IMG/VR virus record: IMGVR_UViG_3300042868_009074 | Coordinates: 186,001-250,000 of that record | Length of the DNA stretch: 64,000 nt | Strand: one strand, 5' to 3' | Part shown: positions 7,509 through 38,569 of the stretch, piece by piece | How the letters are laid out: every line of letters starts with the position of its first letter | Position numbering within the stretch: the first letter of the stretch is position 1 | The notes under the pieces: generated by a model | Told to the model about the DNA's origin: nothing | Databases searched by the model: none | The model's input: only the letters and a program-made list of their open reading frames with translations | Made by a program: the position numbers and the translations under genes

Positions 7509-7568
7509 TTTATTTCTCCTTGTTTAAAGACTATCAATACTGAGTGGTATTTATAGCTATATAGTAAT

Positions 7569-14617: not shown

Positions 14618-14679
14618 GCTGGGTTAACTTCCCTGATTTATATACCTTTAAATTTCATAGAGAACTTAGGAGGTTCATT

Positions 14680-14850
14680 ATGGCTAAGAAAGCTATTATC
14701 TGTCGGCACTCTATCTGGTCGTTGATTAGCGACGATTCACGTCGTGCACTCATCACCCTCATCGAGGCTAACGTTGAGTTTGCTAATCGTCAGCTCAAGT
14801 TTGAGTTGGTTAATGGTCAGCTCAAGAAGGCCCCAGCGAAAGCTGGGTAA
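14680..14850 (+). CDS. Cassette hypothetical protein (56 aa)
   Basis: AGGAGG RBS; ends KKAPAKAG inside a hairpin. Confidence 0.75.
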   Translation: MAKKAIICRHSIWSLISDDSRRALITLIEANVEFANRQLKFELVNGQLKKAPAKAG

Positions 14851-14907
14851 CCTTCAACTATTTATATATCTTTAAATTATAGTATGTCCCTACAGAATGG
14901 AGATTAC

Positions 14908-15162
14908 ATGTATTACGTGTATCTACGACGTCGTATTGCGGTAGCAGTTGTACTGTTTATCGCCTTTATCCCAGTCATCAAGGTGCTCGTTCAAGAGCCA
15001 CCTGCCGATTGCGACCATGCATTGCATGTTGTTGCAAGAGGCGAGACTATTTGGTCAATCGCACATGCGCATTGCACCTCCGGTATCATCACCGCCATTG
15101 ATCAATTGGTAGATCAGTATGGTGGTGTTATCGATGTCGGTGACCGCATTCAGTTGCCTTGA
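14908..15162 (+). CDS. Membrane-anchored LysM-domain protein
   Basis: YLRRRIAVAVV TM segment, then HVVARGETIWSIA...IDVGDRIQLP. Confidence 0.8.
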   Translation: MYYVYLRRRIAVAVVLFIAFIPVIKVLVQEPPADCDHALHVVARGETIWSIAHAHCTSGIITAIDQLVDQYGGVIDVGDRIQLP

Positions 15163-15488
15163 CCAGGTCAAGTACACTCAGCCTTTTAGGTTGGGTGTAT
15201 TTGGCTATTGTATATATCTTTAAATCTTATAGTGGGAGAGATGGCACAGACAAGACTCATCCCGCTGCAGACGTGCAGTCCGGTTCGTCATGAACTGGGA
15301 TCTTGTTGGTAGTCACTGATCTTACCCGCTTAAGAGCGGTGCAGTGACTATTTACCTAATTGTTATATATCTTTAAATTATAGAGTGAGAAGCAATTGCA
15401 AACCGATGGGGCACTGGACTGCAGTGCATTGTTTCTTATTGTGTATATATCTTTAAATTTTATAGTGTGACTTGTGAAAGGAGTTATT

Positions 15489-15668
15489 ATGTCTAATGTA
15501 GACGAAGACGGACGTGGAGCATGTGTGAAATGTGGTCGTAATCAAGTATTGATTGATGAACTATGTGAAATGTGTGACAATGGGTTCACCCTAAAGGAAA
15601 TCAACATGTTTGAAACATGGTTGGCCGTTGGGGCACCCGGCGAGACCCCCTGGAGTAATCCAGGGTAA
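15489..15668 (+). CDS. Cassette zinc-finger peptide
   Basis: CVKC...CEMC; GAAAGGAG RBS. Confidence 0.7.
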   Translation: MSNVDEDGRGACVKCGRNQVLIDELCEMCDNGFTLKEINMFETWLAVGAPGETPWSNPG

Positions 15669-15764
15669 GTCCGTTGTATTTATACACCTTTAGTCCATAG
15701 TCCACTATCACGCGCAGGGTGATTATATATCTTTAAATACTTTAGTGAACTAAGGAGGTTCATT

Positions 15765-15920
15765 ATGTATTATGATTTTGACAAAGATGCTTGGTATTGT
15801 TCGACTTGTCACATCGATCTCAAGCAGATGGTTATTGACTATGACCCAGATTGTGGTGAATGCGAGTCTGCCATTTACACACTTCTGGTCAGTGGTGATC
15901 ACGACGTTTCGGCGTCGTGA
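15765..15920 (+). CDS. Cassette zinc-finger peptide (51 aa)
   Basis: AAGGAGG RBS; WYCSTC...DCGEC. Confidence 0.7.
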   Translation: MYYDFDKDAWYCSTCHIDLKQMVIDYDPDCGECESAIYTLLVSGDHDVSAS

Positions 15921-16111
15921 TTATCCACTTGTATATATCTTTTAAATTTTATAGTGAGTTGCCAACAAAACCAACCAGCGAAGTGGTTCTTCGGGTCTAG
16001 CACAGCACTAGGCGATAATGCAACTAAGATCTTCGGGAGTCATTCTCCCGAGGATCTATGCTGAAAGGTATATATCTTTAAATTATAGTTCGACTTTTGA
16101 AAGGAGTTATT

Positions 16112-16306
16112 ATGAGATTATTTATTATGCCAGATGGAAAAGGCGAAGGCGTCGATGCTGTGGTCTGTGAACGTTGTATTGAAAATGACTACGACATCAA
16201 CGAGAACAACGGTATGAGTGACCTTGAGCAGCAGCGCTACTTAAACGGGCTCGATGTTGCACCTGCTGCATCGTATTGTTGGTTGTGTGGAGTTGACTCG
16301 GCTTAG
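16112..16306 (+). CDS. Cassette zinc-finger peptide
   Basis: CERC...CWLC; GAAAGGAG RBS. Confidence 0.7.
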   Translation: MRLFIMPDGKGEGVDAVVCERCIENDYDINENNGMSDLEQQRYLNGLDVAPAASYCWLCGVDSA

Positions 16307-16372
16307 GCTGGGTTAACTCTCATGTCTTATATACCTTTAAATACTTATATGAACTCTTGAAAGGAGAACACA

Positions 16373-16606
16373 ATGAAGAATGCGATTTTATTCTTTCGTA
16401 ACATTGGCAATCCACACGGCATGGAATGGCGCAAGATTGGCTGTTTCAACATTTGGGCTTTTAGCGACTGGGCTGATTACGCAGGCTCTGGCTTGCATTG
16501 GAGCACCCATGACCGTTGCCTCGTGTTGAAAACATCCGCGAACAAGCGTAAATCTTGGAAGACCATTACACTTCTGCGTTTGCCCAAGGAAGGGACCTCA
16601 GCTTAG
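16373..16606 (+). CDS. Cassette hypothetical protein
   Basis: GAAAGGAG RBS; 77 aa. Confidence 0.7.
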   Translation: MKNAILFFRNIGNPHGMEWRKIGCFNIWAFSDWADYAGSGLHWSTHDRCLVLKTSANKRKSWKTITLLRLPKEGTSA

Positions 16607-16811
16607 GCTGAGGGACTTTTCCTTGTTTATATATCTTTAAATTTCATAGTGGTAGGCTGTACCGACGGCTATTCGATGGTCGGAGTAAATGGTGGGTCAA
16701 CACAGCGCAGGCTCCATCAGCTGGGTACCAGAAAGCTCAGAACGTTTATCGTTCTGGGTTTTTCTATTATTATATATCTTTAAATTTCATAGCGAACTAA
16801 GGAGGTTCAAC

Positions 16812-16970
16812 ATGTTTGTTACTAACTGTCCTCGTTGCGGGCAACTTGCGCCTGACTTTGAGAGTCCATCACATCAAGACGAATGGTGTTTTCATCATCG
16901 TTTGAATGGATTTGGCGAAGTCGTTGTTTCTGACGACGATTACCAGTCATCGGACGACGAGCCCTTTTAG
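16812..16970 (+). CDS. Cassette peptide with CPRC motif
   Basis: AAGGAGG RBS before MFVTNCPRCG. Confidence 0.7.
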   Translation: MFVTNCPRCGQLAPDFESPSHQDEWCFHHRLNGFGEVVVSDDDYQSSDDEPF

Positions 16971-17029
16971 GGTTCGTTGTTTGAGCTTTATATATCTTTA
17001 AATTTCATAGTGACCTAAGGAGGTTCATT

Positions 17030-17371
17030 ATGGCAACAACGCCATCCGTCACATCCCTACTATTACAACAGGAAGATTTGCAAACGCAAATTGATTCTGT
17101 TGACAGCAAGATTGCTGCGCTTCATCAGACCATGAAGGAGTGCGAGTCTCAAATCAACGCTTATGAGCAGGACCGTAAGCGTCTTGATTATTTGACTTGG
17201 GAGATTCAGAAGGCTTTGGCCAAGGCTGTCTGCCCTACTAACCAAGTTCTTCTTCGGTTCTCTAGTACTCTCAACGCTCTTCGGAATCCTGACCATCCGA
17301 GCTATGGAGCACTAGCGATTGACCAACGCTTTGCAGCCCTTGGCTTTACTCAGTCTTCTTCGGAAGGCTGA
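17030..17371 (+). CDS. Cassette coiled-coil protein
   Basis: AAGGAGG RBS; heptad pattern. Confidence 0.8.
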   Translation: MATTPSVTSLLLQQEDLQTQIDSVDSKIAALHQTMKECESQINAYEQDRKRLDYLTWEIQKALAKAVCPTNQVLLRFSSTLNALRNPDHPSYGALAIDQRFAALGFTQSSSEG

Positions 17372-17425
17372 GTTTAGCTGGATTATATATCTTTAAATTA
17401 TAGTGGGACGAAAGGAGTCATCATC

Positions 17426-17614
17426 ATGAATGACTGGGTAACACCAAAAATGGTGGACCAAGCTTTAGACTTTGCAGAACTACATCAACGTTCAAACAAG
17501 TTTTGTCGTGCAATGTTTCTGACCTTCAGGGCTAAGGGTAACTTGTCTGACAAGCAGGTTCTCAAGCTGTTGGAAATCAAAGCTGGTTACCGCCGCAGTG
17601 CTCGAGCTTCTTAG
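17426..17614 (+). CDS. Cassette hypothetical protein
   Basis: GAAAGGAG RBS; GNLSDKQV motif. Confidence 0.75.
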   Translation: MNDWVTPKMVDQALDFAELHQRSNKFCRAMFLTFRAKGNLSDKQVLKLLEIKAGYRRSARAS

Positions 17615-17867
17615 CTCGGGTTACTGTGGTCTTTATATATATCTTTAGCTTATAGTTGTCGTCCACTATCACGCGCCAGCTTGTATGCACATAGTGCTAT
17701 ACAGATGGTGTAGTGATTATACTGTGTGTATATCTTTAAATCTTATAGTGCCGACTGGAGTTGTAACAAGGACTGTCCGGGCACACAAGGATTGCATCTC
17801 TGACGAGAGATGTAGTCTTGTATCTATATAGATCTTTAAATGTCATAGTGTCCTTAGGAGGTACACT

Positions 17868-18020
17868 ATGTCCGCTATTTGCGCACGTTGTCGCTTGGAA
17901 AGCAACAACATCACACCACAGTCCATCGACCACATCCGTGGTCATTACGCAGCATTCCATGCTGCTTCGTCGAAGCCTCGCAAGGCTCGTGCGAAGAAGG
18001 CCCCAGCGAAAGCTGGGTGA
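17868..18020 (+). CDS. Cassette basic peptide (50 aa)
   Basis: AGGAGG RBS; MSAICARC...KKAPAKAG. Confidence 0.7.
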   Translation: MSAICARCRLESNNITPQSIDHIRGHYAAFHAASSKPRKARAKKAPAKAG

Positions 18021-18332
18021 CCTTCAACCGTTTATATGTCTTTAGTTTATATCTATAGTCTCACGTTTCAGGGATTGGAAACCAGTGAACTAAGTGAATA
18101 GTATGAGGAGTCCGCGAACGATTGTCCTACTGAACGCTGTAATAGTATCTTATATATGTTTATATATATGTTGGAGCAATGTCTTAGACTTGATCAGGCA
18201 TAGTTATTTTGCCGGCAAACAATTACGTCTATATTATTAATAGACATATATCTTAAGTTTTAATATTATATTATTCTAAATTTTCAAATAGGGACCCAAT
18301 CCGTGGGTTTCTTGTAGTAGTTTGGAGAAACT

Positions 18333-24084: not shown

Positions 24085-24227
24085 GCAATCATCTAACTAA
24101 GCCCTACCGTAGGTGGGAGTATGCAGAAATGTATACTCCCACTTACACCCCCCATCATACTTTTTTATGTTTATGCAAAGACATACAAAAATATAATTAT
24201 AATTACACAATCTCTTAAGGAGGGATT

Positions 24228-26771
24228 TTGGCCATTAACCCCAAAACAAGAACTATCTGCTATGCTGATGGACCTATTCGCTCTACAGGTGGATATCAAG
24301 TAGGTTTCTACGATATATCTCACCTTCGCCAGGCATTACAATATTCTGGCGAATCATTCTATCGGGTAGGCTCTTTGCCTATCCCACAAAACGAACATGA
24401 ATTTACCCAAATTCAACAAATCATTAATGATCCTTCTATTCAGTATGCTCTAGTTGACAAGAACAAAATTGTTATCTGTCAAATTGGCAACAATACTGAA
24501 TGGCTTAGTATCTTTACTGATATGGGTTATACTGTCCACGGTGGAGGCAAGACTGCTAAGCGGTTGAAGACTCTCCATCGACCTACTTTAATCAATGCTC
24601 ACTTTGATCTTGATGAAATCAAAATACGCTATTGTGAAGCCGGCGACTTTAGTCGCTATTTCGATAGCGATGAAGAAGGCTATTGGCTTATAGATGCTGA
24701 AGACTATCAAGAATTTTATCAAAATCCTGAAGTTTGGGATCGACTCTTAGACGGTGGCTTTGCTATCCATCCACGATTGATCCATAAAGGTATTGATAAC
24801 CTACCTATCTTTGATCCCGCTGAAAACGAGGATCCAGGTGAGTACTATCTTAATCCTACTATGCGTATGGATTGCATCCGTAATCTATATAATGCTAAAG
24901 TATTTAATATTAGACTTACTGGACCAATGGGTCAGCTTAAAGGCAACTGCTTTGTTACCGATAAACTTCCTGAAGGTGTAGATGTATTGACTTGGCATGG
25001 AAATGTCAAGACAGAGATCTCATATTCTGAAGGCTATCAACTCATTGCTGAGCCTCAAGGACCTAAGTCCAAAGTCCGTACGGACGATCAAACTCTTATT
25101 AATATGCCACAACTCTTTACCAAGAGTGATATGGAATATTGGCTAGACGAGGAATATAAGAAACTCTTCAACGATGCCATCAACAATAAGCTTTTGATGA
25201 ACTGGAAGAATGTATACCAACGTTCTTTCCGTGATGATACTAACCTTGAAGATGAAGAGTCTTATGCACGGTTTCAATATCAAGGTTATCGCTGGAAAGC
25301 AATGGGGATGAAGGTAACTGATTCCCCTTGGTTATTCCAGACCCTTGCTACTAGCCATGCTAAACCCCTTCAAGAACGTATCCCAATCCCTTGTTCTGTA
25401 TCTGAACAGATTATTAGCGAGTCTATGGCTCGCTTATCTGGTTATGATGTAGAAGTCGAAGAAGGAACTATTCAACGCATCAATGACCTTGGTGTACACG
25501 TAGTTAATGATCTCGATTGGATTGAGATGTATGAGAGCCATGGTGGCTGCGACGGTGACGACTTCTTTGGTTTATTCTATAGGACTCCAGTTGGTGGACA
25601 ATATGATAAAGAAAAGGTTGTCTTTGCACGTCGATCTCCAAATGGTCTTGGTGAGTACTCTGTATTTAGATATGTAGAAGGACAATGGTCTCCAACTTGG
25701 TTGACCAGTGACGGTACTCAAGTTAAGTTTCCTGAGTGTTCTGGACGTGGTTGGCCTATGCGCCTATCTACCGCCATTCACGCAGGGAAAGTTAGCTATG
25801 TAGGACTTCCTTCTTCTACTGCTCCTAAAGCTGAACGTACTGAAACCTATACTAGACAAGATGTCTTTAATGATATCCGATCTAGTATGACAGGTGGAGG
25901 CGTTGGCGGTTTCGTCAATGCTGTAATGCTACATACTTCTGTGTTCCATTCTCATCGTCCACTTCAACTGTGTAGTTTGGAAGATGCAATCGACGGTTGC
26001 ACTCAGACAAACGAACCAGCTGACCGTGAAGCGATTGAGCTTGAAGCTAAAGTATTGGTTGATGAAGTTATTAGTTCTGGACTTCCAGTAGACCGTTCAT
26101 TATGGGATGCTAAGAAGTTTGACTACTATCTCAAGCCAGGCCAATTTGTAGAAAAGCACGAAGGTAAAATCACTCAGCTTAATATGATCACGAAAACTAA
26201 ATATCGTGAGTATGTAAAGATGATTACCGAATGGGCTCAAAAGAACTGTCAACCTGATGAAGTTATTCATAAGATTGGCTATCGCTTGAGCTTCAATGCT
26301 ATTCCTATCTTAAAACAATTCCGTAAAGATATTTACAACTTGAATCAATCAGACATGAATGAATCTAGTGGTTATCTTGACAGCAGTAGCTGGGACTTCC
26401 TGTATCAATCAATCGTTGATAAGATTGAACTACATGACAATGAGTCTGATCGACACGATCTAGTACTTGGTCTCTATTCTGCCAGCTTGAAGCACCCAAC
26501 TTCAAATGGTAAAGTAAGTGACCAAATCGTATTCAATCGACATGTCTTTCCGTTCCTTGAACGAGCACTCCAATATTATGGATTGGCTAACGTAGTTTCT
26601 TTCATTAGAAACAAAGATGGCACAGTCCGAGTAATGCAGAGCAAGACATCTGAATGGATTGGCATCGATGAAGATGGCAGTTATCATACCTTTGATGAAG
26701 CCATTGAATACCAAAGATTCCGTGGTAAGATTAGCCCTATTGTGTTTACCAACGCAAAGAAAACTGCTTAA
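24228..26771 (+). CDS. Single-subunit two-barrel (DPBB) RNA polymerase, QDE-1/YonO-like
   Basis: AAGGAGG RBS. Motifs LDGGFAI (DG.G.I), FNIR...LKG (fQiR...KG), HGGCDGDD (metal-binding loop), RRSPNGLGE (R.P....G[DE]), VGGFVNAVM (lG..aNa), DAIDG (AVD). Confidence 0.7.
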   Translation: MAINPKTRTICYADGPIRSTGGYQVGFYDISHLRQALQYSGESFYRVGSLPIPQNEHEFTQIQQIINDPSIQYALVDKNKIVICQIGNNTEWLSIFTDMGYTVHGGGKTAKRLKTLHRPTLINAHFDLDEIKIRYCEAGDFSRYFDSDEEGYWLIDAEDYQEFYQNPEVWDRLLDGGFAIHPRLIHKGIDNLPIFDPAENEDPGEYYLNPTMRMDCIRNLYNAKVFNIRLTGPMGQLKGNCFVTDKLPEGVDVLTWHGNVKTEISYSEGYQLIAEPQGPKSKVRTDDQTLINMPQLFTKSDMEYWLDEEYKKLFNDAINNKLLMNWKNVYQRSFRDDTNLEDEESYARFQYQGYRWKAMGMKVTDSPWLFQTLATSHAKPLQERIPIPCSVSEQIISESMARLSGYDVEVEEGTIQRINDLGVHVVNDLDWIEMYESHGGCDGDDFFGLFYRTPVGGQYDKEKVVFARRSPNGLGEYSVFRYVEGQWSPTWLTSDGTQVKFPECSGRGWPMRLSTAIHAGKVSYVGLPSSTAPKAERTETYTRQDVFNDIRSSMTGGGVGGFVNAVMLHTSVFHSHRPLQLCSLEDAIDGCTQTNEPADREAIELEAKVLVDEVISSGLPVDRSLWDAKKFDYYLKPGQFVEKHEGKITQLNMITKTKYREYVKMITEWAQKNCQPDEVIHKIGYRLSFNAIPILKQFRKDIYNLNQSDMNESSGYLDSSSWDFLYQSIVDKIELHDNESDRHDLVLGLYSASLKHPTSNGKVSDQIVFNRHVFPFLERALQYYGLANVVSFIRNKDGTVRVMQSKTSEWIGIDEDGSYHTFDEAIEYQRFRGKISPIVFTNAKKTA

Positions 26772-26780
26772 CAGTTTATG

Positions 26781-26827
26781 AACCCCCAGAGTATTAGCAC
26801 GTTGCTAGTATTCTGGGGGTTTTTTTT
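26781..26827 (+). terminator. Rho-independent terminator
   Basis: AACCCCCAGAGTATTAGCA/TGCTAGTATTCTGGGGGTT followed by a T-run. Confidence 0.85.
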
Positions 26828-26870
26828 CTCACGCGGGCGAACGCGTACGAGGGTTAACACCAACTTACAA

Positions 26871-26886
26871 TGTTCCACGTGAAACA
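26871..26886. promoter_or_regulatory. parS-like site
   Basis: TGTTCCACGTGAAACA, one mismatch from the chromosomal parS palindrome TGTTTCACGTGAAACA; intergenic. Confidence 0.75.
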
Positions 26887-26913
26887 TCCGCTACCATAAA
26901 AAACAACGAACTG

Positions 26914-27026
26914 TAGTCAGCTCTGCTGTCTCTAGGAAATAATCTTTGAGCACTTACCCTCCTTAGCTCAGATTAAAATCTCCCAGTGCCCCATCACCAC
27001 TGTCCTAGAGATGGCAGAGTTGACTA
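26914..27026 (+). ncRNA. Candidate sRNA: 24-bp closing stem with two C-rich loops
   Basis: TAGTCAGCTCTGCTGTCTCTAGGA/TCCTAGAGATGGCAGAGTTGACTA; the G-U pairs favour the + strand. T-run follows. Confidence 0.6.
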
Positions 27027-27058
27027 TGGTTTTTTTTAAACGAGAGGCACCAACTAAT

Positions 27059-27343
27059 ATGGCTGATATTGATATCTCAAGTTATAACTTACAAGACCCT
27101 GCAGACATTGAGAAATTCTTCTTGGCTAACCACGCTGAGCTCATGTCTATGATGTCAGTGCTGTCTGAAAATGTTAGCACTATCCAAAATTATATTCTTG
27201 AATTAGATCTTTACACACTTCCAGAAGATACTGTTGTTAGTCTTTCTTCATTAATGGACGCTAACTTCAAAGTTCATGAAACCATCATAACTTTCTTTCA
27301 AGCTCTCATGCAAGTCTCTAAGATAGCTCCACGTCAAGATTAA
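27059..27343 (+). CDS. Helical hypothetical protein
   Basis: GAGG RBS before MADIDIS. Confidence 0.65.
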   Translation: MADIDISSYNLQDPADIEKFFLANHAELMSMMSVLSENVSTIQNYILELDLYTLPEDTVVSLSSLMDANFKVHETIITFFQALMQVSKIAPRQD

Positions 27344-27531
27344 TTTGTTAGACCATTGATTTTATATACCTTCGAGGACATCATCACTATATATATTATA
27401 TTATTTGTAATGATGTTCTTGATTTTATCAACTTTATTTGCTAAACTATTCCTATGTAACACAATTATTTATATACCTTTATATGAATAAAAATCCATAA
27501 ACAATCCCCGTTAACGGGAAAGGAAACCACA

Positions 27532-27756
27532 ATGCAAAAGAGAAATAAAACTCAACTCATAACACAATACCTTGACCAGAACATTGGTAGTGAAGTTACT
27601 CCTCAGCAGATTGCTGATGCAGTAGAAACTACCATTCAAACAGTATACACTTTTATTCGTTCAAATGCATCACGCTTTGAGTCAGTTAAGCGTGGTACTT
27701 TTAAAATTAATTCCTCACAAAACACCCTCTTTTTAAATAACGAGGGTACTATATAG
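27532..27756 (+). CDS. Small winged-HTH DNA-binding protein
   Basis: VTPQQIADAVETTIQTVYTFI...VKRGTFK; GAAAGGA RBS. Confidence 0.7.
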   Translation: MQKRNKTQLITQYLDQNIGSEVTPQQIADAVETTIQTVYTFIRSNASRFESVKRGTFKINSSQNTLFLNNEGTI

Positions 27757-28336
27757 AGGTTATCAACAATTGATAACAGCGCAGTAATCTCGATAAATCG
27801 GCTTCATGCTAACCATTTGCTTTGTTAAGAGCGAATAAGTAAACTAAAAATCTACTTCTTTGTTTTAAAGTTATGGTTAGATATGAGGCCTTTTTTTATC
27901 TATTGCTTCCTGTTTTCAAAAGATTATTATTAAGGAATAGACTATGGCTAAGAAAGATAGAACTCAACAGCACCCTGTTGATGTAAATCTACTCACTAGG
28001 TCAATAGTCTTGGTTGCTCAAAAAATTGATCAACTTACCGAAGAAGTTCGTCTTCTTAGGCAAGACCTTTCTAATAGTCCTAACAAGGAGGAATGTAGCT
28101 GAACACCAACTGGAACCACCCATATCCAATGTGTTATACTATATACATGCCCGTTGACAAGCGGGCAGGGAAACAATCCCTTACGTAACAGTTATACTGT
28201 GAAGTCGGAGAAGGCAAACCTGTCTTTTGTTGAACGGACAATTCGTTGTGTCCGGAACATTCGATTTCGCAACCTGCGCGATGCTAATGAAATCTGTTTT
28301 TAAGATTTCAAACCCAATCGAAAAGGAGCGAATAAA

Positions 28337-29212
28337 ATGCGCATACTACGAGTGATAATATTAATATTAACAATGCTAGTAACATCTGTTGTTGTTAGCT
28401 CTGCTGCTGGTGCAGCAACTGGAGGCGTCTCGGAGCTTTCTTCCGAGCCCCGAAGTACCACCCTACTCAGTACTCCTACTAAGTGGAAGTCCGTCGAATT
28501 TAAGATGGGACCTTCTATTAAGTACTGGACTAAAGTAGCCCAATGCGAGACTCGCCAGGACTGGCAAGACGGTGGCAACTGGGGTGGTGGACTTGGCATA
28601 GCTAAATCCACATGGCAAGGATATGGTGGCAAAGAGTTTGCATCTCATCCTTCCAAAGCGACTGTTCTTGAACAGATCGTAGTGGCTAACAGAATTGCAG
28701 TGTTTGGCTACCAAACAAAGAATGAGTTTATGACTGTCGAAGACAGAACTAATAACACACCATTCTTTAGACCAGCTGTTGGCTTTAATGGTTGGGGCTG
28801 TATTAAAAATAATACTTACCTCAAACCTAAAAAAGACACAGTTCTTAAAGTTAAACTTCCTGTAGGTAAAGAATTTTACTGTCCACAGTTTGAAGATACT
28901 TTTAAGAAGTATGCCCTGCCACACAAAGTGTTTTCTTATATCGCTTGGCGTGAATCTAGGTGTAATCCTGGAGCCGTCAATGCTAAATGGGAAAACGGGC
29001 ATATAGTCTGGACCCTCAACTCTAACGGTTCATACGACTCAGGTCTGCTCCAAATCAACTCTTCATGGTTTAAAACATTAAGAGAACAATTTGGTTATGC
29101 CCCTGACGATCTAATGACACCAGCAGTCAATGCTTTATTCGCCAGTTGGATTCTCCACTTCTCTAGTGGCAGACTTAGAAACTGGAATGTTAAAGCTACT
29201 TCTGTACGCTAG
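28337..29212 (+). CDS. Secreted dual lytic transglycosylase: Rpf-like domain plus SLT-like domain
   Basis: Signal peptide; WTKVAQCET...GGGLGIAKSTWQGYGG...ATVLEQIVVA (Rpf); IAWRESRCNPGAVN...DSGLLQINSSW (SLT). Confidence 0.85.
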   Translation: MRILRVIILILTMLVTSVVVSSAAGAATGGVSELSSEPRSTTLLSTPTKWKSVEFKMGPSIKYWTKVAQCETRQDWQDGGNWGGGLGIAKSTWQGYGGKEFASHPSKATVLEQIVVANRIAVFGYQTKNEFMTVEDRTNNTPFFRPAVGFNGWGCIKNNTYLKPKKDTVLKVKLPVGKEFYCPQFEDTFKKYALPHKVFSYIAWRESRCNPGAVNAKWENGHIVWTLNSNGSYDSGLLQINSSWFKTLREQFGYAPDDLMTPAVNALFASWILHFSSGRLRNWNVKATSVR

Positions 29213-29245: not shown

Positions 29246-29560
29246 ATGCAAAACACAAGAATCATTACCCTTAATCATAAGGATATCCCTATGCCTAAAA
29301 CTAACTACCTACCAGAAGAACTAGACTCTAAGTCTAAAATAAAAGAAATCATACTACAATACATTATCGATGCCAATGTAGAAGAGTATGAATACGACGA
29401 TGACGACGGCGACTGCTGTGACGATTGCTCGTATGAAGATGCTGACTGCAGCGACTGCTCATGTCATTCTGATTTTCCTGGCTACGATGAACATCTTGCT
29501 GCCCTACTAGTAAGATTCATCTATAATAACTTTAAACTTCAAGAAACACCTAATGAATAA
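29246..29560 (+). CDS. Acidic Cys-rich hypothetical protein
   Basis: DCCDDCSYEDADCSDCSCH. Confidence 0.6.
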   Translation: MQNTRIITLNHKDIPMPKTNYLPEELDSKSKIKEIILQYIIDANVEEYEYDDDDGDCCDDCSYEDADCSDCSCHSDFPGYDEHLAALLVRFIYNNFKLQETPNE

Positions 29561-30308
29561 TCAAATTAACTATGACCATGTTCACAATCAAGATCTAGCC
29601 CAATTAGATATTGAATCAGACACCCTTATGAGCGTAGATGTTGTGTCTATAATGTCACGCAAATTTAATTTTATTTCTCGTGGTTTTGATACTACAGAAA
29701 TGGAAAACCTTGTATCTTTCTATTATGACATAGAAGACACACGGATCTCGTTGCTAGATCTCAATGATTCTAAGAACTCATCTGTTTTTAAATCATATTC
29801 TCATTATCTAAGAGGATTAGAGAATTCTACTACTCCCATCTTTAGTGACTATAACCACTCCACTGTGACTGGTACCTGGGCTTTACAACAGCCTGGTATC
29901 GGACAAGCTGCCTCTGCTGCGTTGTTGTCTACGATAGATATTCACAAAGCTCCTAACTTTAATAACTTATGGAGCTATTGTGGTCTTAATCCAAGTACTG
30001 CTCAACCAGGATCTTGGAACCCATTCTTAAAGAATCTTACTTGGAAGATCGGCAAATCTTTTGCTACTGTTCCTGATTCCTTTTACGGTCAACTCTATAC
30101 TAAAGAGCTTGACCGTAGAATCAAACAACGAGATGATTCAGGTGCTGACACAGAAGACTCCAGGCTAGAAGCTCAAGCTCGACGCTATGCAACTAAGATC
30201 TTCTTGTCTCACTGGCATCAGATCCGATACATAGAAGTTATTGGACAAGAGCCATCATCTTCATTCAAAAATTCTAGTTACATTGCCCCACCTAATAATC
30301 CTTATTGA
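29553..30308 (+). CDS. IS110/Nop-domain-like protein without a nuclease domain (TasA-like)
   Basis: HhH PGIGQAASAALLSTID, LWSYCGLNP, WNPFLK, ARRYATKIFLSHW. No DEDD/RuvC N-terminus. Confidence 0.7.
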   Translation: MNNQINYDHVHNQDLAQLDIESDTLMSVDVVSIMSRKFNFISRGFDTTEMENLVSFYYDIEDTRISLLDLNDSKNSSVFKSYSHYLRGLENSTTPIFSDYNHSTVTGTWALQQPGIGQAASAALLSTIDIHKAPNFNNLWSYCGLNPSTAQPGSWNPFLKNLTWKIGKSFATVPDSFYGQLYTKELDRRIKQRDDSGADTEDSRLEAQARRYATKIFLSHWHQIRYIEVIGQEPSSSFKNSSYIAPPNNPY

Positions 30309-32630: not shown

Positions 32631-34310
32631 ATGACCGTTACCCTTAGACCCTACCAGCAAGAAGCTCTTGATGCTATCCTATTCCATGAAGGAAAAGGAA
32701 TTAGTAAACAACTTGTAGTACTCCCTACTGGTGCCGGTAAAACAGTTTTGTTTTCTCATCTACCAGTTATTCGCAAGAACACTCTACCTATGCTCGTTCT
32801 TGCACATCGTGCAGAGCTATTAGAGCAGGCCCGCAATAAGATCATGGCATCTAACCCTACACTTACTGTAGAGATAGAGCAAGCTGATCGTAAAGCTGGC
32901 CATGTAGACGTAGTGGTAGCTTCTGTAGCTACCTTAGGTCGTAGTGGCACACCCCGTATTGAAGGATATCCTAATGACTATTTTAAGTCTATCGTTATTG
33001 ACGAAGCCCACCATGCTGCTGCTCCTTCTTACAGAAGAATTGTTGATTACTTTAATCCTCCTTTTCTGTTGGGAGTTACGGCAACGCCGCAAAGGTCGGA
33101 TTCGGTTAGACTCATTGATGTTTTCGATGAGATAGTTTACTATAAATCAATACAAGATCTCATTGAAGATGGCTGGCTTAGTCCCCTCATCGGATATAGA
33201 GTTAAAACAAATGTAGACATATCAGATGTCGAAATTAGAAACGGTGAATATGCTCAAGATCAACTCGAAGAAAAAGTGGATACTCCTGAGCGCAACGCTT
33301 TTGTTGTCGCTACCTATCGCAATTTGGCAATGGCTACGAAAGCCATTGTATTCGCATCCGGCGTTCGACACGCCGAAAACCTGGCCTTATCCTTTCGACA
33401 AGCGTCGGTAGAATGCGAAGTAATCGTGGGGACAACTCCTCACGAAGAACGTCAAAAGATCCTTCAGGATTTTTCTACGAATAAACTTAAAGTAATTGTC
33501 AATGTAGGTGTTCTCACCGAAGGTTTTGATGAACCCTCATTGGAAACAATTATCTTAGCTAAACCAACCAGATCAACACTTCTGTATACTCAGATTGTTG
33601 GTCGAGGTACCCGTCTATTCGAAGGCAAAGAACATTGTACGATTATCGATATTGCAGACACCACGAGGGGGAAGAAGCCTATTGGCCTTCCTACTCTTTT
33701 GGGAATGCCACCAGAGTTCGATTTACAAGGACAGAGCCTAACAGACGTCGCTAAGAAGTATGAAGAGCTAGAAGACTATTGTCCTGGTGAAGCTATTCGT
33801 GTACTTAATCCAGATGATATTCAAGGTGCATACAAACGCATTAACTTGTTTATGCCACCACCACCAAACCCTGCTATCTTAGAATACTCTAAGTATGTAT
33901 GGGCAGAGATCGGTGAAAACTCTTACCACCTAGGTCTTAATAATAATGAGTCCATGCATATAACATTAGATGCTTTGGGTCGTTGGAATACTGAGCTTCA
34001 TTATAAAGATAATGATAAAACTTCAGTTAAGATTATTGGTAGAGCTGATAATCTTAGATCAGTATTTTCCGGCACTGACAAATGGATTCAAGAGAATCGT
34101 GCAGCATCTTTAGTTCTAATCGATTCTTCTGCTCAATGGAGAACTGATGGACCTACTGATCCTCAAAAGAAAATGTTAAAGCGTTTAGGTATACCCCTTA
34201 CTGCTGACATGACTAAAGGTATGGCTTCTCAAATCATATCTAAGTATTACGAAAACAATCCTAAGCCTAAATGGCTTCAAAATAAGATTGAATCTAAAAA
34301 ACGTTGGTAG
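32631..34310 (+). CDS. SF2 DExH helicase (ResIII/Irc3-like)
   Basis: LRPYQ, PTGAGKT, DEAHH, TATP, LTEGFDEP, QIVGRGTR. Confidence 0.93.
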   Translation: MTVTLRPYQQEALDAILFHEGKGISKQLVVLPTGAGKTVLFSHLPVIRKNTLPMLVLAHRAELLEQARNKIMASNPTLTVEIEQADRKAGHVDVVVASVATLGRSGTPRIEGYPNDYFKSIVIDEAHHAAAPSYRRIVDYFNPPFLLGVTATPQRSDSVRLIDVFDEIVYYKSIQDLIEDGWLSPLIGYRVKTNVDISDVEIRNGEYAQDQLEEKVDTPERNAFVVATYRNLAMATKAIVFASGVRHAENLALSFRQASVECEVIVGTTPHEERQKILQDFSTNKLKVIVNVGVLTEGFDEPSLETIILAKPTRSTLLYTQIVGRGTRLFEGKEHCTIIDIADTTRGKKPIGLPTLLGMPPEFDLQGQSLTDVAKKYEELEDYCPGEAIRVLNPDDIQGAYKRINLFMPPPPNPAILEYSKYVWAEIGENSYHLGLNNNESMHITLDALGRWNTELHYKDNDKTSVKIIGRADNLRSVFSGTDKWIQENRAASLVLIDSSAQWRTDGPTDPQKKMLKRLGIPLTADMTKGMASQIISKYYENNPKPKWLQNKIESKKRW

Positions 34311-34336
34311 TCAATACCACCTACGGAAACTATTCT

Positions 34337-35917
34337 ATGAACAATAAATTAACTAAATACATAACAGCATTAGTTATGTTAACTACGTTTACACTTACTA
34401 ATGCTATTCCAGCCCAAGCTGCCCAAAACAAGGGCGGTTCAGAAATAACTAAACCCAATTCTAAACCTAAGAAAAAGACTAACAAAAGAGTTAAGTCTCA
34501 TTCTTATAAGAAAGTTGTAAAGACTAAGTCTAAAGTTGCTACTGCTAACTCTAAAGTTAAATTTAAACTTTCTTTGTCCACAGCTATTCCTAAGATAGGT
34601 GCAGACTATTCTTATGATTCTGGTTATACTGGGCAAGGATCTTACGTTGTTGTCATTGATACCGGCGTAGAAAAAGCACATCCTTTCTTAGCCGATAAGA
34701 TAGCTCTAGAAGCCTGCTTTGCTACTCGTTGCCCTAATGGTACCAATCAGATGATTGGACCAGGAGCAGCTGTCCCAGTGCATTATCACGGGACACACGT
34801 TGCTGGTATCATTGCTGGTAGCAACTCACAGTTTCATGGAATTGCCCCAGGTGCAAAGATCATAGCTATCAACATTTTTGACGTATATGGTGCAGCCTAT
34901 GATGATGATATGGTTAAAGCTTTAAACTATGTCTACTCTTTAGCTGATACTTACAACATTACTTCAGTTAATATGTCACTTGGTGGTAACACTGTTTTTA
35001 GATCTACTTGCGATTCTTATCTTCCTGATGTTACTCAAGCTATTAACAATTTAAAGTCAAAGAATATTGCTACAGTTATTGCTTCTGGAAACAATTATTC
35101 TGCTGGTATGTCAGCTCCTGCTTGTATCTCTACCGCCGTTAGCGTAGCTGCTACTTATACTTCTACAGATAAAGTAACTACATTTTCTAACGTATCTCAG
35201 TTTACTACACTGTCGGCTCCTGGCTATGCCATTAACTCTTCTAAGTTGATGGGATCTTATGGTTCAGCTTCTGGTACCTCAATGGCAACTCCATTTGTTG
35301 CCGGAGCTTTAGCCGTGTACCGTTCCAAGTTTGGTGTCCAATCTGTAGATAAAGTTATTACTGACTTTCAATCTACTTCTTCGCCTGCTGTTGATGATTT
35401 CACTGGAATTATAACTAAGCGAATTAATATGAAGTCCTTGATTGATTCCACTACTACACCGGTTGTTCCTCCAGTAGTAACTACTACTACTATTCCAAAT
35501 GCAACAACTACAACGTTACCTACTACAACAACTACTACTACTGTTCCGGTGACCACTACTACTGTCCCAGTAACTACAACCCTTCCTCCCGTTACTGGAT
35601 ATGCAGTAGGAAAACCATTGCTTGTTTCGTTAGACTCTATGTCGTCTGTCTATAACTCTTACCTCCATGATGTATTCACGATTACATATCTTGATGTTTA
35701 TTATGGCAAAGATGTTTTAACTCATTATCTATTGACTTGCGACAGTGGTCAAACGTTTACTATTCCAGTAGATTATACTGGCCGTTTAAACTATTATAGA
35801 TTAAAGAATACAGATGGAACCTACGCTAAAGCTACAGGTATCATTAGGTGTTACCTGCAAGGTGCAGTAGGATCCTTTCTTGCTCCAAAATCTTGGTGGG
35901 AAGACGTCAATAGATGA
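34337..35917 (+). CDS. Secreted S8 subtilisin-like serine protease with Thr-rich linker
   Basis: Signal peptide; VIDTG, HGTHVAG, ASGN, SGTSMATP. Confidence 0.93.
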   Translation: MNNKLTKYITALVMLTTFTLTNAIPAQAAQNKGGSEITKPNSKPKKKTNKRVKSHSYKKVVKTKSKVATANSKVKFKLSLSTAIPKIGADYSYDSGYTGQGSYVVVIDTGVEKAHPFLADKIALEACFATRCPNGTNQMIGPGAAVPVHYHGTHVAGIIAGSNSQFHGIAPGAKIIAINIFDVYGAAYDDDMVKALNYVYSLADTYNITSVNMSLGGNTVFRSTCDSYLPDVTQAINNLKSKNIATVIASGNNYSAGMSAPACISTAVSVAATYTSTDKVTTFSNVSQFTTLSAPGYAINSSKLMGSYGSASGTSMATPFVAGALAVYRSKFGVQSVDKVITDFQSTSSPAVDDFTGIITKRINMKSLIDSTTTPVVPPVVTTTTIPNATTTTLPTTTTTTTVPVTTTTVPVTTTLPPVTGYAVGKPLLVSLDSMSSVYNSYLHDVFTITYLDVYYGKDVLTHYLLTCDSGQTFTIPVDYTGRLNYYRLKNTDGTYAKATGIIRCYLQGAVGSFLAPKSWWEDVNR

Positions 35918-36731: not shown

Positions 36732-36815
36732 GCCCGAGTGGCGGAATAGGCAGACGCAGGGGGCTTAAACCCCCCGGAGGGCAACCTCTTACCGGTTCAA
36801 GTCCGGTCTCGGGTA
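36732..36815 (+). tRNA. tRNA-Leu(TAA)
   Basis: Acceptor GCCCGAG/CTCGGGT, anticodon loop CTTAAAC, long variable arm, GTTCAAGTC. Confidence 0.92.
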
Positions 36816-36844
36816 CTATGCAATACACTATAATAAGGAAAAAA

Positions 36845-37336: not shown

Positions 37337-38569
37337 ATGTCTATTCTAGTATCTGAACTAGATCTTCCTTATGTACCACCTAAACTTATTAAATCTGATT
37401 TAACAACTTATGATCAATTTAAAATTGGTTTAGAAGCTCATAAGCAAAACTGGATTGGCACAACAAAACTTTCTTATGTGATTTTAGACCACAAGCATTC
37501 TGCTGCTATGTTGAAAGACAAGAGATGGCACAATGGTTTGTATTTATTAAGCGAACTTAATCCTCATTTTACTGAAGAGATTAAGATGAGTAGGAAAAAA
37601 TTAATAATTAACTTAGAAGGCGAAGATCATTCAAGACTCAGAAAGATAATTGCTCCAGTTTTTTCACCAAAGACAGCTGAGCTTCTTCGACCAGACATGC
37701 AAGATGCTATCAATCAAGTTCTTAATGATGTCATCGAAAGCGGTCAATGCGATTTGCAAAAAGATGTATTCAACAAGTATCCATCATACATTATCTCTAA
37801 GATAGTAGGAGTCCCCAATTCAGATTGGGAGAAGTTTAGTCAATGGGCTGATGATACCTTCAAAACATTTGGTGGAAACTTTGAACACCATAGCGAAGTT
37901 ATATTAAATACTCAAAATGAATTAGATCAATATACTAATAATTTAATCATCAGCAAAAAAGAAAACAAAGGCAATGACCTTGTTTCTATGTTAATTGACG
38001 CAGAATTTGATGGTCAAAAATTATCAGATCAAGAAATACAATCTCTTATCCAAGTAGTTCTGATGGCAGGCATGGATACGACTAGAGCACAGCTTGGTCT
38101 TATAGCAGTTATGCTATCTGAGAGACCAGATTTAATATCGATGTTAGCCAATGATTTAAATGTTGAAGATATAATAGAAGAGTCTACTCGCTTAGATTCT
38201 GTTTTTAAATATGTAATGAGAATTGCTTCAGAAGACATTGAATACAATGGAGTCTTATTCCCTAAGGGAACAATTATCTCCCCAGCATTGGGTGTTAATA
38301 ATTACGATGACTTAGCTTTTGAAAACGCATCTGAATTTATTCTTGATCGTAAAGCAACAAAGGGCATTACCCTGTCTTATGGTGGTGGAATTCATTACTG
38401 TCTCGGTGCTTCTTTAGCACGAGCTCAAATGCAGGAATGTATGAAAGTTGTTGCAAAAAGAATGCCAGATTATAAAATTACTGGAGAAGTTCTTTATAAA
38501 GAAGCTTACGAATCAGTAGTCGGTCCAAGATCTATCCCTGTGACTTTTACACCTAACATTAAGATTTGA
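37337..38569 (+). CDS. Cytochrome P450
   Basis: HSRLRK, I-helix AGMDTT, ExxR (EESTR), heme motif YGGGIHYCLGASLAR. Confidence 0.95.
   Translation: MSILVSELDLPYVPPKLIKSDLTTYDQFKIGLEAHKQNWIGTTKLSYVILDHKHSAAMLKDKRWHNGLYLLSELNPHFTEEIKMSRKKLIINLEGEDHSRLRKIIAPVFSPKTAELLRPDMQDAINQVLNDVIESGQCDLQKDVFNKYPSYIISKIVGVPNSDWEKFSQWADDTFKTFGGNFEHHSEVILNTQNELDQYTNNLIISKKENKGNDLVSMLIDAEFDGQKLSDQEIQSLIQVVLMAGMDTTRAQLGLIAVMLSERPDLISMLANDLNVEDIIEESTRLDSVFKYVMRIASEDIEYNGVLFPKGTIISPALGVNNYDDLAFENASEFILDRKATKGITLSYGGGIHYCLGASLARAQMQECMKVVAKRMPDYKITGEVLYKEAYESVVGPRSIPVTFTPNIKI

What the first reader, a model, noticed from the sequence alone, without database searches (positions are those of the whole stretch)
26914..27026. 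sRNA candidate displaying an anti-Shine-Dalgarno loop
Seen: a 24-bp closing helix encloses two hairpins, with loops ACTTACCCTCCTTA and CCCCATCAC. CCTCCTTAG is the exact complement of CTAAGGAGG in cassette leaders at about 15750, 16798 and 17015, and the polymerase RBS TAAGGAGGG is also complementary to the loop. Known: actinobacterial 6C RNA uses two C-rich loops to pair with mRNAs. Inference: a translational shut-off RNA for early phage genes or host mRNAs.
Basis: partly seen in the sequence, partly recalled or inferred. Interest (0 to 1): 0.62.

Follow-up and report, generated by a model that had tools for sequence, protein, structure and literature searches.

The report
Phage small RNA targeting its polymerase gene
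A giant lake-water phage carries a conserved, tightly folded small RNA whose exposed loop matches, and co-evolves with, the ribosome-binding site of the phage's own RNA polymerase gene next door, so it most likely switches that gene's translation off; expression has not been shown.

Summary
On the + strand, 26908-27032 folds into a 30-bp closing helix around two hairpins, followed by U8. The fold is far more stable than shuffled sequence (z = -9.8). It matches no Rfam family.

Homologues occur in at least 18 distinct sequences from related uncultivated freshwater jumbo phages, probably actinophages. They come in a two-hairpin and a three-hairpin form. Both forms show strong compensatory base changes, and G-U pairs mark the + strand as the RNA.

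The new result concerns the target. In three phage genomes scanned gene by gene, the best partner of loop 1 is the translation start region of the gene directly upstream. That gene encodes an 847-aa protein whose confident model matches two-barrel RNA polymerases (QDE-1, RDR2, phage P74/P32 RNAPs).

Across eight lineages the loop and this Shine-Dalgarno region change together. The base 3' of GGAGG pairs with the base 5' of CCUCC in 8 of 8. In the three-hairpin clade a third loop matches a second site at about -26 in the same leader. The window phage lacks both that hairpin and that site.

The match to early-gene leaders is weaker and is not conserved in relatives. The four RNA runs laid gave no RNA contig over the element, so expression and repression remain inferred.

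The parts
26908..26937 (+). 5' arm of the 30-bp closing helix of the small RNA
   Evidence: MFE fold. In the two-hairpin clade 21 of 34 predicted pairs show changes on both sides. In the three-hairpin clade 15 of 29 closing-helix pairs do.
26940..26951 (+). Hairpin 1, 5' side of the stem (with a 2-nt internal loop)
   Evidence: The GAGC/GCUC stem core is conserved and is aligned by model R1 to hairpin 1 of the relatives.
26952..26965 (+). Loop 1, ACUUACCCUCCUUA: the anti-Shine-Dalgarno loop and proposed seed
   Evidence: Unpaired with probability about 1.0. CCUCCU is the only invariant loop stretch in alignment A8. It is complementary to 24216-24224. The loop co-varies with that site across lineages.
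26966..26975 (+). Hairpin 1, 3' side of the stem
26984..27002 (+). Hairpin 2 (5-bp stem, loop 26989-26997 CCCCAUCAC). The loop is C-rich in most relatives. Its partner is unknown.
   Evidence: The loop is UCCCCC in L190, AACCCCUC in L193 and UUACCCCCCGA in the three-hairpin clade, but UUCCAUCAU in L188.
27003..27032 (+). 3' arm of the closing helix
27033..27040 (+). U8 tract. Together with the helix it looks like an intrinsic terminator and the 3' end of the RNA.
   Evidence: The U-tract is present but of variable quality in relatives.
26896..26907 (+). Conserved A-rich single-stranded 5' leader (AUAAAAAACAACG-like). The likely 5' end of the RNA lies about here.
   Evidence: Aligned motif in all two-hairpin variants, with CAUAUAAAAC in the three-hairpin clade. 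The motif is unique in the 267.8-kb genome. The transcription start is not mapped.
26871..26886 (.). Canonical parS site (TGTTCCACGTGAAACA) beside the RNA gene
   Evidence: It is the only copy in the complete genome. The same site adjoins the RNA gene in L003, L004, L188, L191 and L193, and lies downstream of it in L190. Identified as parS from the literature.
24216..24230 (+). Proposed target: Shine-Dalgarno UAAGGAGGG (24216-24224) and UUG start (24228) of the polymerase gene
   Evidence: Best duplex with loop 1 among 391 start regions of the genome (-15.4 kcal/mol, 9 contiguous pairs). The same gene ranks first in two other genomes. Co-variation is shown.
24228..26771 (+). 847-aa gene: single-subunit two-barrel RNA polymerase (structure-based call)
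   Evidence: No Pfam or PHROG match. AlphaFold2 model with 47 sequences: pLDDT 87.7, pTM 0.85. All 21 Foldseek hits at E <= 1e-3 are two-barrel RNAPs, including RDR2 at 8e-10, QDE-1 at 3e-8 and phage P74 gp62 / P32 gp64. Invariant D442, D444 and D445.
26780..26822 (+). The polymerase gene's own intrinsic terminator, which separates it from the RNA gene
   Evidence: 20-bp stem followed by a T run.
27059..27343 (+). 94-aa ORF directly downstream, of unknown function. It is not obligatorily linked to the RNA.
   Evidence: Homologous ORF in L003, L004, L129 and L188, but absent after the RNA in L190, L191 and L193. No Pfam or PHROG match.
15750..15758 (+). Early-gene leader with CUAAGGAGG (also at 16797-16805 and 17015-17023): a possible secondary target, specific to this phage
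   Evidence: Duplex with loop 1 is -11.9 kcal/mol. In relatives only GGAGG matches.

Best explanation
This is the gene for a small RNA of about 135-145 nt, running from roughly 26896-26908 to 27040 on the + strand, in an uncultivated 267.8-kb freshwater phage that is probably an actinophage.

The two ends of the RNA pair into a 30-bp helix that ends in a U-tract. This helix holds two hairpins out, each with a fully single-stranded loop. Loop 1 looks like the 3' tail of 16S rRNA (CCUCCUUA).

Loop 1 pairs with 9 nt of the ribosome-binding site (UAAGGAGGG, three bases before a UUG start) of the gene immediately upstream. That gene encodes the phage's single-subunit two-barrel RNA polymerase. By occupying the Shine-Dalgarno sequence, the RNA competes with the 30S subunit and turns polymerase synthesis down.

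The result would be a dedicated post-transcriptional brake on a phage transcription enzyme, encoded beside its target but acting in trans. In the three-hairpin relatives a further loop (UUUCCGAUUAG) grips a second site (CUAAUCGGAAA) about 26 nt upstream of the start, giving a two-point contact.

Shown: the structure, its conservation, loop accessibility, the complementarity, its top rank in three genomes, and loop-target co-variation.

Inferred: that the RNA is made, that pairing represses rather than activates, when it acts during infection, and which polymerase transcribes it.
For: Structure
- The fold has z = -9.84.
- Thirteen distinct three-hairpin homologues: 52 consensus pairs, 20 with changes on both sides, 97.5% of cells paired against 30-43% when the partners are slid, and covariation 0.354 against 0.201 in shuffles (0 of 500 reach it).
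- Five two-hairpin sequences including the window: 21 of 34 pairs have changes on both sides.
- Model R1, built without the window, finds the window element at 48.4 bits, E = 1e-11. The opposite strand scores 26.9 bits.
- There is one copy per genome.

Target
- Loop 1 was scanned against every predicted start region. The polymerase gene ranks first of 391 (G001), of 90 (G003) and of 88 (G004).
- Loop / leader pairs:
  - window: CCCUCCUUA / UAAGGAGGG
  - L188: CCCUCCUU / AAGGAGGG
  - L190: UACCUCCUAG / CUAGGAGGUA
  - L191 and L193: GCCUCCUA / UAGGAGGC
  - L129: UACCCUCCA / UGGAGGGUA
  - L148: CCCUCCC / GGGAGGG
  - L003 and L004: CCCUCC / GGAGGG
- The base 3' of GGAGG is G, G, U, C, G, G, G, G in these lineages. 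It pairs with C, C, A, G, C, C, C, C in 8 of 8.
- Cognate pairings beat all but 99 of 40320 permutations by match length, and all but 76 by energy.
- Loop 3 matches 9-11 nt at about -26 in the L003 and L004 leaders and 6 nt in L129.
- In G003 the + strand holds only 2 GGAGGG and 2 AATCGGAAA in 48.7 kb, and one of each lies in this leader, 14 nt apart.
- The window phage lacks hairpin 3 and has AAUCUC in place of AAUCGG.

Co-occurrence
- All nine lineages examined whose polymerase is at least 60% identical carry the RNA downstream.
- Six more distant homologues (46-54% identity) have an ordinary AGGAGG-type Shine-Dalgarno sequence (AAGGAGGA, UAGGAGGA or AGGAGGU) and no such RNA immediately downstream.

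Target identity.
Against: - There is no evidence of expression. Contigs from four freshwater metatranscriptomes cover flanking regions but not 26813-27317. Such contigs rarely recover small RNAs, so this is weak evidence either way.
- No convincing promoter is found in the window phage. Relatives have TTGACA-17-TAAACT-type promoters, but the window has a 29-nt gap there.
- Any CCUCC loop will favour the strongest Shine-Dalgarno sequence in a genome. The polymerase gene also has a strong one in relatives that lack the RNA, so part of the match is generic.
- In L003 and L004 loop 1 gives only 6 contiguous Watson-Crick pairs.
- The lineages are related, so the permutation test overstates their independence.
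- Start regions came from a home-made gene caller that itself uses Shine-Dalgarno strength.
- Pairing of 9-10 nt inside a 14-nt loop is sterically demanding.
- Loop 2 has no identified partner.
Confidence: 0.62

Rival explanations
1. A general anti-Shine-Dalgarno RNA. The loop titrates or blocks many strong ribosome-binding sites, shutting off the early phage 'cassette' genes and/or host mRNAs. The polymerase site would be just one of many.
For: Three early leaders carry CUAAGGAGG. They belong to an array of about 24 near-identical promoter-leader units at 13.0-18.2 kb. Duplex energy with these leaders is -11.9 kcal/mol. The C-rich loop 2 has no assigned partner, and host transcripts could not be examined.
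Against: The early-leader match is weaker than the polymerase match, and only 3 of about 24 leaders have it. In relatives the early leaders share only GGAGG with the loop. The bases flanking the CCUCC core track the polymerase leader, not a general consensus. A generic sponge would not need a second loop matching a non-SD site in one particular leader.
Confidence: 0.15
2. A cis-acting 5' leader or processing element for the downstream genes. The long helix would be an RNase III site or a leaky terminator that sets the level or stability of the following mRNA, and the loops would be incidental or bind a protein.
For: A small ORF starts 19-30 nt after the U-tract in several lineages. The U-tract is poor in some relatives, for example L129. 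A helix of about 30 bp is long enough for RNase III (general knowledge).
Against: The 94-aa ORF is absent downstream in L190, L191 and L193, yet the RNA is kept. No complementarity was found between the loops and the downstream ribosome-binding site (-5.4 kcal/mol). This model does not explain why the loops co-vary with another gene's leader.
Confidence: 0.1
3. A protein-binding or decoy RNA. It might mimic the 16S rRNA 3' tail and so soak up a host factor or an anti-SD-cleaving toxin, or it might bind, or serve as template for, the neighbouring QDE-1-like polymerase.
For: Loop 1 ends in CCUCCUUA, like the 16S tail. Toxins that cut the anti-SD are known in Actinobacteria (paper abstracts listed: PMC12274833, PMC12620021). 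The polymerase's best structural matches are RNA-dependent enzymes. CCGAUU recurs in loops 2 and 3.
Against: The loop sequence outside CCUCC varies and follows the mRNA leader. A mimic of an invariant host rRNA tail, or a protein-binding site, would be expected to stay constant.
Confidence: 0.06
4. A DNA-level element (cruciform, partition or packaging signal) tied to the adjacent parS, rather than an RNA.
For: A long inverted repeat lies next to the only parS site of the genome, and this linkage is conserved.
Against: There are 6 G-U pairs in the window helix and many G-U to A-U or G-C exchanges in relatives. These would be A-C mismatches on the other strand. The + strand folds 10.7 kcal/mol better and scores 48 against 27 bits with R1. 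A U-tract lies on one side only.
Confidence: 0.03

Closest known systems
c4 antisense RNA of phages P1 and P7 (Rfam RF01695; Citron & Schuster 1990, cited in PMC2864571)
   Same: Both are phage-encoded small RNAs in which a stem formed by the two ends holds out hairpin loops. Short loop sequences pair with two sites in a target leader, one of which covers the ribosome-binding site, and so block translation of a phage regulatory gene encoded close by. (The c4 description rests on my own knowledge of the literature; the family's listing is.)
   Different: There is no sequence or structure match in Rfam. Here the target lies upstream on a separate transcript that ends in its own terminator. The target is an RNA polymerase, not icd/ant. 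The closing helix is 30 bp. The host is probably an actinobacterium. RNase P processing is unknown.
6C sRNA of Actinobacteria (Rfam RF01066; PMC6486639)
   Same: Both have C-rich hairpin loops that pair with G-rich mRNA sites without a need for Hfq. Both belong to an actinobacterial setting: this phage has three WhiB genes and an Rpf-like lysin.
   Different: No Rfam match even at E <= 10. This RNA is phage-encoded. It has a long closing helix that 6C lacks. Its loop is CCUCC-centred and tuned to one leader rather than being a run of six or more C. Multiple targets are not shown.
UCCC / C-rich-motif sRNAs of Firmicutes (RsaE/RoxS, LhrC)
   Same: Several exposed C-rich motifs bind Shine-Dalgarno regions and repress translation (own knowledge).
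   Different: Those are chromosomal and have many targets. There is no Rfam match here, and the architecture is different.

Membership tests
6C RNA (RF01066) | Match to the Rfam covariance model | tested here: not met
   No 6C hit at gathering score or at E <= 10, either on the window element or on the L004 homologue.
6C RNA (RF01066) | Two hairpins whose loops each carry a run of about six C | tested here: inconclusive
   The window loops hold CCCUCC and CCCC. Three-hairpin relatives have CCCUCC and CCCCCC. L188 loop 2 is UUCCAUCAU.
6C RNA (RF01066) | Encoded in actinobacterial chromosomes | tested here: not met
   All copies lie on phage contigs. The single hit in a genome collection is a 13-kb contig with phage gene content, binned into a Cyclobacteriaceae MAG.
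c4 antisense RNA (RF01695) | Match to the Rfam covariance model | tested here: not met
   No hit.
c4 antisense RNA (RF01695) | Loops complementary to two sites of a nearby phage leader, one covering the ribosome-binding site | tested here: met
   Loop 1 pairs with the Shine-Dalgarno sequence in all lineages. Loop 3 pairs with the -26 site in the three-hairpin clade. The window phage has only the SD contact. This is a functional analogy only.
c4 antisense RNA (RF01695) | Processed from a longer transcript by RNase P | not testable with these tools
   RNA ends could not be obtained. The RNA runs are contigs and do not cover the element.
Trans-acting base-pairing sRNA (general class) | A discrete transcript with its own promoter and terminator | tested here: inconclusive
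   The terminator-like helix and U8 are present. Sigma-70-like promoters are present in L003, L004, L129 and L190, but none is convincing in the window. There is no RNA evidence.
Trans-acting base-pairing sRNA (general class) | Seed and target co-vary across species | tested here: met
Two-barrel single-subunit RNA polymerases (QDE-1 / YonO / P23-45-type), for the target gene | Double-psi beta-barrel fold similar to solved members | tested here: met
   Model pLDDT 87.7. All 21 top Foldseek hits are two-barrel RNAPs, with E from 8e-10 to 9e-5. Atlas feature hits include PF05183 clusters.
Two-barrel single-subunit RNA polymerases (QDE-1 / YonO / P23-45-type), for the target gene | Catalytic acidic loop (DxDGD-type) and polymerase activity | tested here: inconclusive
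   An invariant HGG-D-x-D-D-F (D442, D444, D445) is present in 47 sequences. Its placement in the active site was not checked, and activity and template preference are untested. There is no Pfam match.

The most novel reading that the evidence does not exclude
The RNA and the polymerase form a self-limiting circuit. The phage's own two-barrel polymerase, whose nearest solved relatives are RNA-dependent enzymes, would transcribe or copy this RNA from the unique conserved A-rich start motif. The RNA would then shut off polymerase translation. The single parS site kept beside the RNA gene would tie the circuit to loading of the host ParB clamp on the phage genome.
Probability: 0.08. Interest if true: 0.85.

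Novelty: new variant of a known kind. Interest (0 to 1): 0.68.

Why it matters
Small RNAs encoded by lytic and jumbo phages are barely charted. None is known to control a phage RNA polymerase, and none is described for phages of freshwater Actinobacteria.

Here an uncurated RNA family comes with its likely target already identified by natural compensatory changes. These changes supply ready-made orthogonal RNA/leader pairs (window, L190, L191) for a clean reporter test.

The work also annotates a large family of 'hypothetical' 850-aa phage proteins (at least 239 clusters) as two-barrel RNA polymerases. It suggests that their dosage is tightly limited, through a UUG start, a very short Shine-Dalgarno-to-start spacing and a dedicated RNA.

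If confirmed, this adds a post-transcriptional layer to how giant phages schedule their own transcription machinery.

Tried and rejected
- **Rfam.** The gathering scan of the whole window gave only tRNAs. E-value scans of the element, of the L004 homologue and of 27340-28345 gave only chance rows such as microRNA precursors and rli37.
- **Isolated phages (INPHARED).** No DNA or protein match to the region or to the 847-aa protein.
- **Helix-motif patterns.** Patterns built on TGTCTCTAG...TTACCC...CTAGRGA returned the known loci plus three chance matches, L131-L133. The loop-motif pattern returned 8 chance matches among 20 metagenome hits and 2 among 3 genome hits.
- **Ascertainment.** The 12 metagenome homologues were found with a pattern that required the loop motifs. 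Their loop conservation is therefore ascertained, not independent. The synteny-derived loci (L003, L004, L129, L188-L193) are independent.
- **The palindrome as promoter.** I first took the upstream palindrome for a phage promoter or operator. The literature shows it is the canonical parS site.
- **L004 loop 1 and a start codon.** An apparent match of L004 loop 1 to 'SD + spacer + AUG' is not conserved and was dropped.
- **C-rich stretch at about 24140.** It resembles the loops, but it is the tail of the upstream gene's terminator.
- **Cis pairing.** Pairing of the loops with the downstream ORF's ribosome-binding site is weak.
- **Cognate against non-cognate energies with stem bases included.** These were uninformative. 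Loops alone gave the signal.
- **RNAcofold.** It cannot represent loop-to-linear kissing contacts and predicted none.
- **The A-rich start motif.** It is not a general promoter. It is unique in the genome.
- **First AlphaFold model (7 sequences).** It was poor, with pLDDT 55, and was replaced by the 47-sequence model.
- **Sequence-profile searches of the polymerase.** Searches against PDB chains and Pfam gave nothing.
- **Metatranscriptome contigs.** No coverage of the element. This does not show that the RNA is silent.

Full report
**1. What is in the sequence**

The window is part of an IMG/VR virus record. The same region is 100% identical in a 267,766-bp contig that CheckV rates complete (G001).

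On the + strand, 26908-26937 pairs with 27003-27032. This is a 30-bp helix that includes six G-U pairs. It encloses two hairpins:
- Hairpin 1 has the loop ACUUACCCUCCUUA (26952-26965).
- Hairpin 2 has the loop CCCCAUCAC (26989-26997).

U8 follows the helix at 27033-27040.

The fold energy is -59.1 kcal/mol against -26.0 +/- 3.4 for shuffled sequence (z = -9.84). The reverse strand reaches only -48.4. The loop bases are unpaired in essentially the whole ensemble.

CTAAGGAGG lies at 15750, 16797 and 17015, which is 4 matches in the window against 0.43 expected. TAAGGAGGG lies at 24216-24224.

**2. Context**

The 847-aa ORF upstream (24228-26771, UUG start) ends with its own strong terminator at 26780-26822. 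Then comes the 16-bp palindrome TGTTCCACGTGAAACA (26871-26886), then the element. An RBS and a 94-aa ORF (27059-27343) follow.

Neither ORF has a Pfam or PHROG match. The element matches no Rfam family at any threshold.

**3. Relatives and structure**

Synteny searches with the 847-aa protein found homologous elements in three other viral contigs, L003, L004 and L129. These carry three hairpins inside a helix of about 30 bp.

A loop-motif pattern then found 12 genuine metagenome copies and one copy on a MAG contig.

Thirteen distinct three-hairpin sequences give a consensus of 52 pairs:
- 20 pairs show changes on both sides.
- 97.5% of cells are paired, against 30-43% when the partners are slid by one to three columns.
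- The covariation score is 0.354 against 0.201 in shuffles, and 0 of 500 shuffles reach it.

A covariance model built from these sequences, without the window, finds the window element at 48.4 bits (E = 1e-11). It aligns the window's hairpin 1 to theirs. The opposite strand scores 26.9 bits. Each genome holds one copy.

Closer relatives of the window's polymerase (66-71% identity) were fetched by exact-protein look-up. They carry two-hairpin versions like the window's: L188/L189, L190, L191/L192 and L193.

In the five-sequence alignment of these, 21 of 34 pairs have changes on both sides. The only invariant loop stretch is CCUCCU.

The many G-U pairs, and exchanges of G-U with A-U or G-C, show that the + strand RNA is the selected form, not the DNA.

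**4. The target**

I called genes in three phage genomes and folded each loop against every start region from -30 to +12. In all three genomes the best partner of loop 1 is the start region of the 847-aa gene directly upstream of the RNA. It ranks first of 391, of 90 and of 88.

The leaders of this gene were then collected from every locus that holds both the gene start and the RNA. Loop and leader change together:

| Lineage | Loop 1 | Leader |
|---|---|---|
| window | CCCUCCUUA | UAAGGAGGG |
| L188 | CCCUCCUU | AAGGAGGG |
| L190 | UACCUCCUAG | CUAGGAGGUA |
| L191, L193 | GCCUCCUA | UAGGAGGC |
| L129 | UACCCUCCA | UGGAGGGUA |
| L148 | CCCUCCC | GGGAGGG |
| L003, L004 | CCCUCC | GGAGGG |

The base just 3' of GGAGG is G, U or C in different lineages. 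It always faces its Watson-Crick partner 5' of CCUCC (8 of 8).

Over eight lineages the cognate assignment beats all but 99 of 40320 permutations by contiguous match, and all but 76 by energy. The lineages are related, so this is not a true probability.

In the three-hairpin clade the third loop (UUUCCGAUUAG) matches 9-11 nt (CUAAUCGGAAA) about 26 nt before the start in L003 and L004, and 6 nt in L129. L147 has this site twice.

In G003 the + strand holds only two GGAGGG and two AATCGGAAA in 48.7 kb. One of each sits in this leader, 14 nt apart.

The window phage lacks that hairpin. Its leader reads AAUCUC at the corresponding place.

Polymerase homologues at 46-54% identity have an ordinary AGGAGG-type Shine-Dalgarno sequence (AAGGAGGA, UAGGAGGA or AGGAGGU). 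They have no such RNA immediately downstream.

**5. What the target encodes**

Sequence methods give nothing. The family is large, with at least 239 clusters, all labelled 'hypothetical'.

Feature search in the ESM Atlas pointed to clusters carrying PF05183, the cellular RdRP family.

A first model from 7 sequences was poor. A model from 47 sequences reached pLDDT 87.7 and pTM 0.85.

All 21 of its Foldseek hits at E <= 1e-3 are two-barrel RNA polymerases:
- maize and Arabidopsis RDR2 (8e-10)
- Neurospora QDE-1 (3e-8)
- the phage RNAPs P74 gp62 and P32 gp64 (9e-6 to 9e-5)

D442, D444 and D445 are invariant. I therefore call it a single-subunit two-barrel RNA polymerase of the kind described for YonO (PMC5467207) and P23-45 (PMC10770324). 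Its activity and template preference are untested.

**6. Mechanism proposed**

The RNA's loop 1 mimics the anti-Shine-Dalgarno tail of 16S rRNA. It occupies the polymerase gene's unusually placed ribosome-binding site: the SD ends 3-5 nt before a UUG start in the two-hairpin clade. In the three-hairpin clade a second loop clamps a site upstream. The expected outcome is reduced initiation, hence a limit on polymerase synthesis.

The long closing helix would keep the loops exposed and end transcription.

This works like the c4 RNA of P1/P7 and like C-rich-loop sRNAs such as 6C (PMC6486639). It is a member of neither family.

**7.

The three early leaders belong to an array of about 24 promoter-leader units (TATATATCTTTAAAT followed by TATAGT) at 13.0-18.2 kb. 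They pair with the loop at -11.9 kcal/mol, against -15.4 for the polymerase site. In relatives the early leaders share only GGAGG with the loop. They may be secondary targets in this phage only.

**8. Host**

G001 encodes three WhiB-family proteins. The control search rings only in Corynebacterium. The window holds a lysin with an Rpf-type transglycosylase domain, and a relative has WhiB next to the polymerase gene. The phage occurs in at least 14 lake-water metagenome runs. A freshwater actinobacterial host is therefore likely but not shown.

**9. Weak points**

- There is no expression evidence. Contigs of four metatranscriptomes cover 25500-26812 in parts and 27388-28500, but not the element.
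- The window's promoter is not identified. Relatives have sigma-70-like hexamers that fall in a 29-nt gap of the window.
- Part of the complementarity is what any anti-SD loop would show against a strong SD.
- Loop 2 has no partner.
- Gene calls were home-made.

Noticed in passing
window 26871-26886; also L003 5764-5779, L004, L188, L190, L191, L193: A canonical chromosomal parS site (TGTTCCACGTGAAACA) sits next to the small-RNA gene. It is the only parS in the complete 267.8-kb genome, which encodes no ParB N-terminal domain, so a host ParB would have to be used. The linkage to the RNA gene is kept in most lineages, and in L190 the site lies on the other side. L129-type phages instead have GGTTCCA-N12-TGGAACC.
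   Followed up: partly
IMG/VR loci L005-L124, e.g. L029 and L064: The same 18-mer parS occurs in more than 120 viral contigs of very different GC content. In some it forms directional arrays in short intergenic spacers just upstream of ribosome-binding sites (10 copies in L029, 4 in L064). This looks like ParB/KorB-type regulation or clamp loading on phage genomes.
   Followed up: partly
window 13018-18165 (+ strand): An array of about 24 near-identical promoter-like units: TATATATCTTTAAAT, 0-3 nt, then TATAGT. Each follows a terminator hairpin and precedes a small ORF, which is the layout of an early-gene region. In several leaders (those starting near 14639, 15724, 16771 and 16989) the SD lies in the loop of a small hairpin of the GAAC-UAAGGAG-GUUC type.
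   Followed up: partly
window 27388-28033 and 27790-27895: This mostly non-coding stretch (one 74-aa ORF at 27532-27756) is the part of the 3-kb region most consistently present in RNA contigs of four freshwater metatranscriptomes. It starts after a copy of the early-promoter motif at 27470. It holds a second terminator-like structure made of a long closing helix with an inner hairpin (z = -5.7). A counterpart in L165 at 1003-1100 is weakly hit by model R1.
   Followed up: partly
window 28125-28335; L129 about 7500-7690; L165 1140-1300: A conserved non-coding leader of about 200 nt (CATGCCCGTT..AGCGGGCAGGGAA..) lies upstream of the Rpf/SLT transglycosylase gene (28337-29212). It is conserved in relatives and seen in an RNA contig. 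There is no Rfam match. It may be a cis-regulatory RNA.
   Followed up: partly
L003 5545-5740; L004 5565-5760: L003 and L004 share a conserved non-coding stretch of about 200 nt between the polymerase terminator and parS. It ends in a hairpin with a U-rich tail and is absent from the window. It may be another small RNA.
   Followed up: no
L165 (JBDNFI010000070.1, 13,113 bp): This contig is binned into a Cyclobacteriaceae MAG, yet it carries the phage small RNA and the same neighbouring genes as L129 and L142. It is probably a mis-binned phage contig, not evidence for a Bacteroidota host.
   Followed up: partly
window 7569-8990 (-), 9416-10393, 34304-35917, 37337-38569, 29553-30308: Unusual cargo for a phage: a ClpB-like AAA+ protein, RecA, a subtilase, a cytochrome P450, and a 251-aa ORF with only the C-terminal IS110-type transposase domain.
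   Followed up: no
window 36732-36816 and 42504-42580: The two tRNA finders disagree. ARAGORN calls a tRNA-Leu(UAA) at 36732-36816 that Rfam does not report at gathering score. Rfam reports a weak tRNA (35.2 bits) at 42504-42580 that ARAGORN does not call.
   Followed up: no
L129 5560-6400: In this relative about 0.9 kb is inserted between the polymerase gene and the RNA gene. It includes small ORFs and a reverse-strand ORF-like stretch. The RNA has therefore kept its own promoter (TTGATT-17-TATACT) independently of the polymerase transcript.
   Followed up: no
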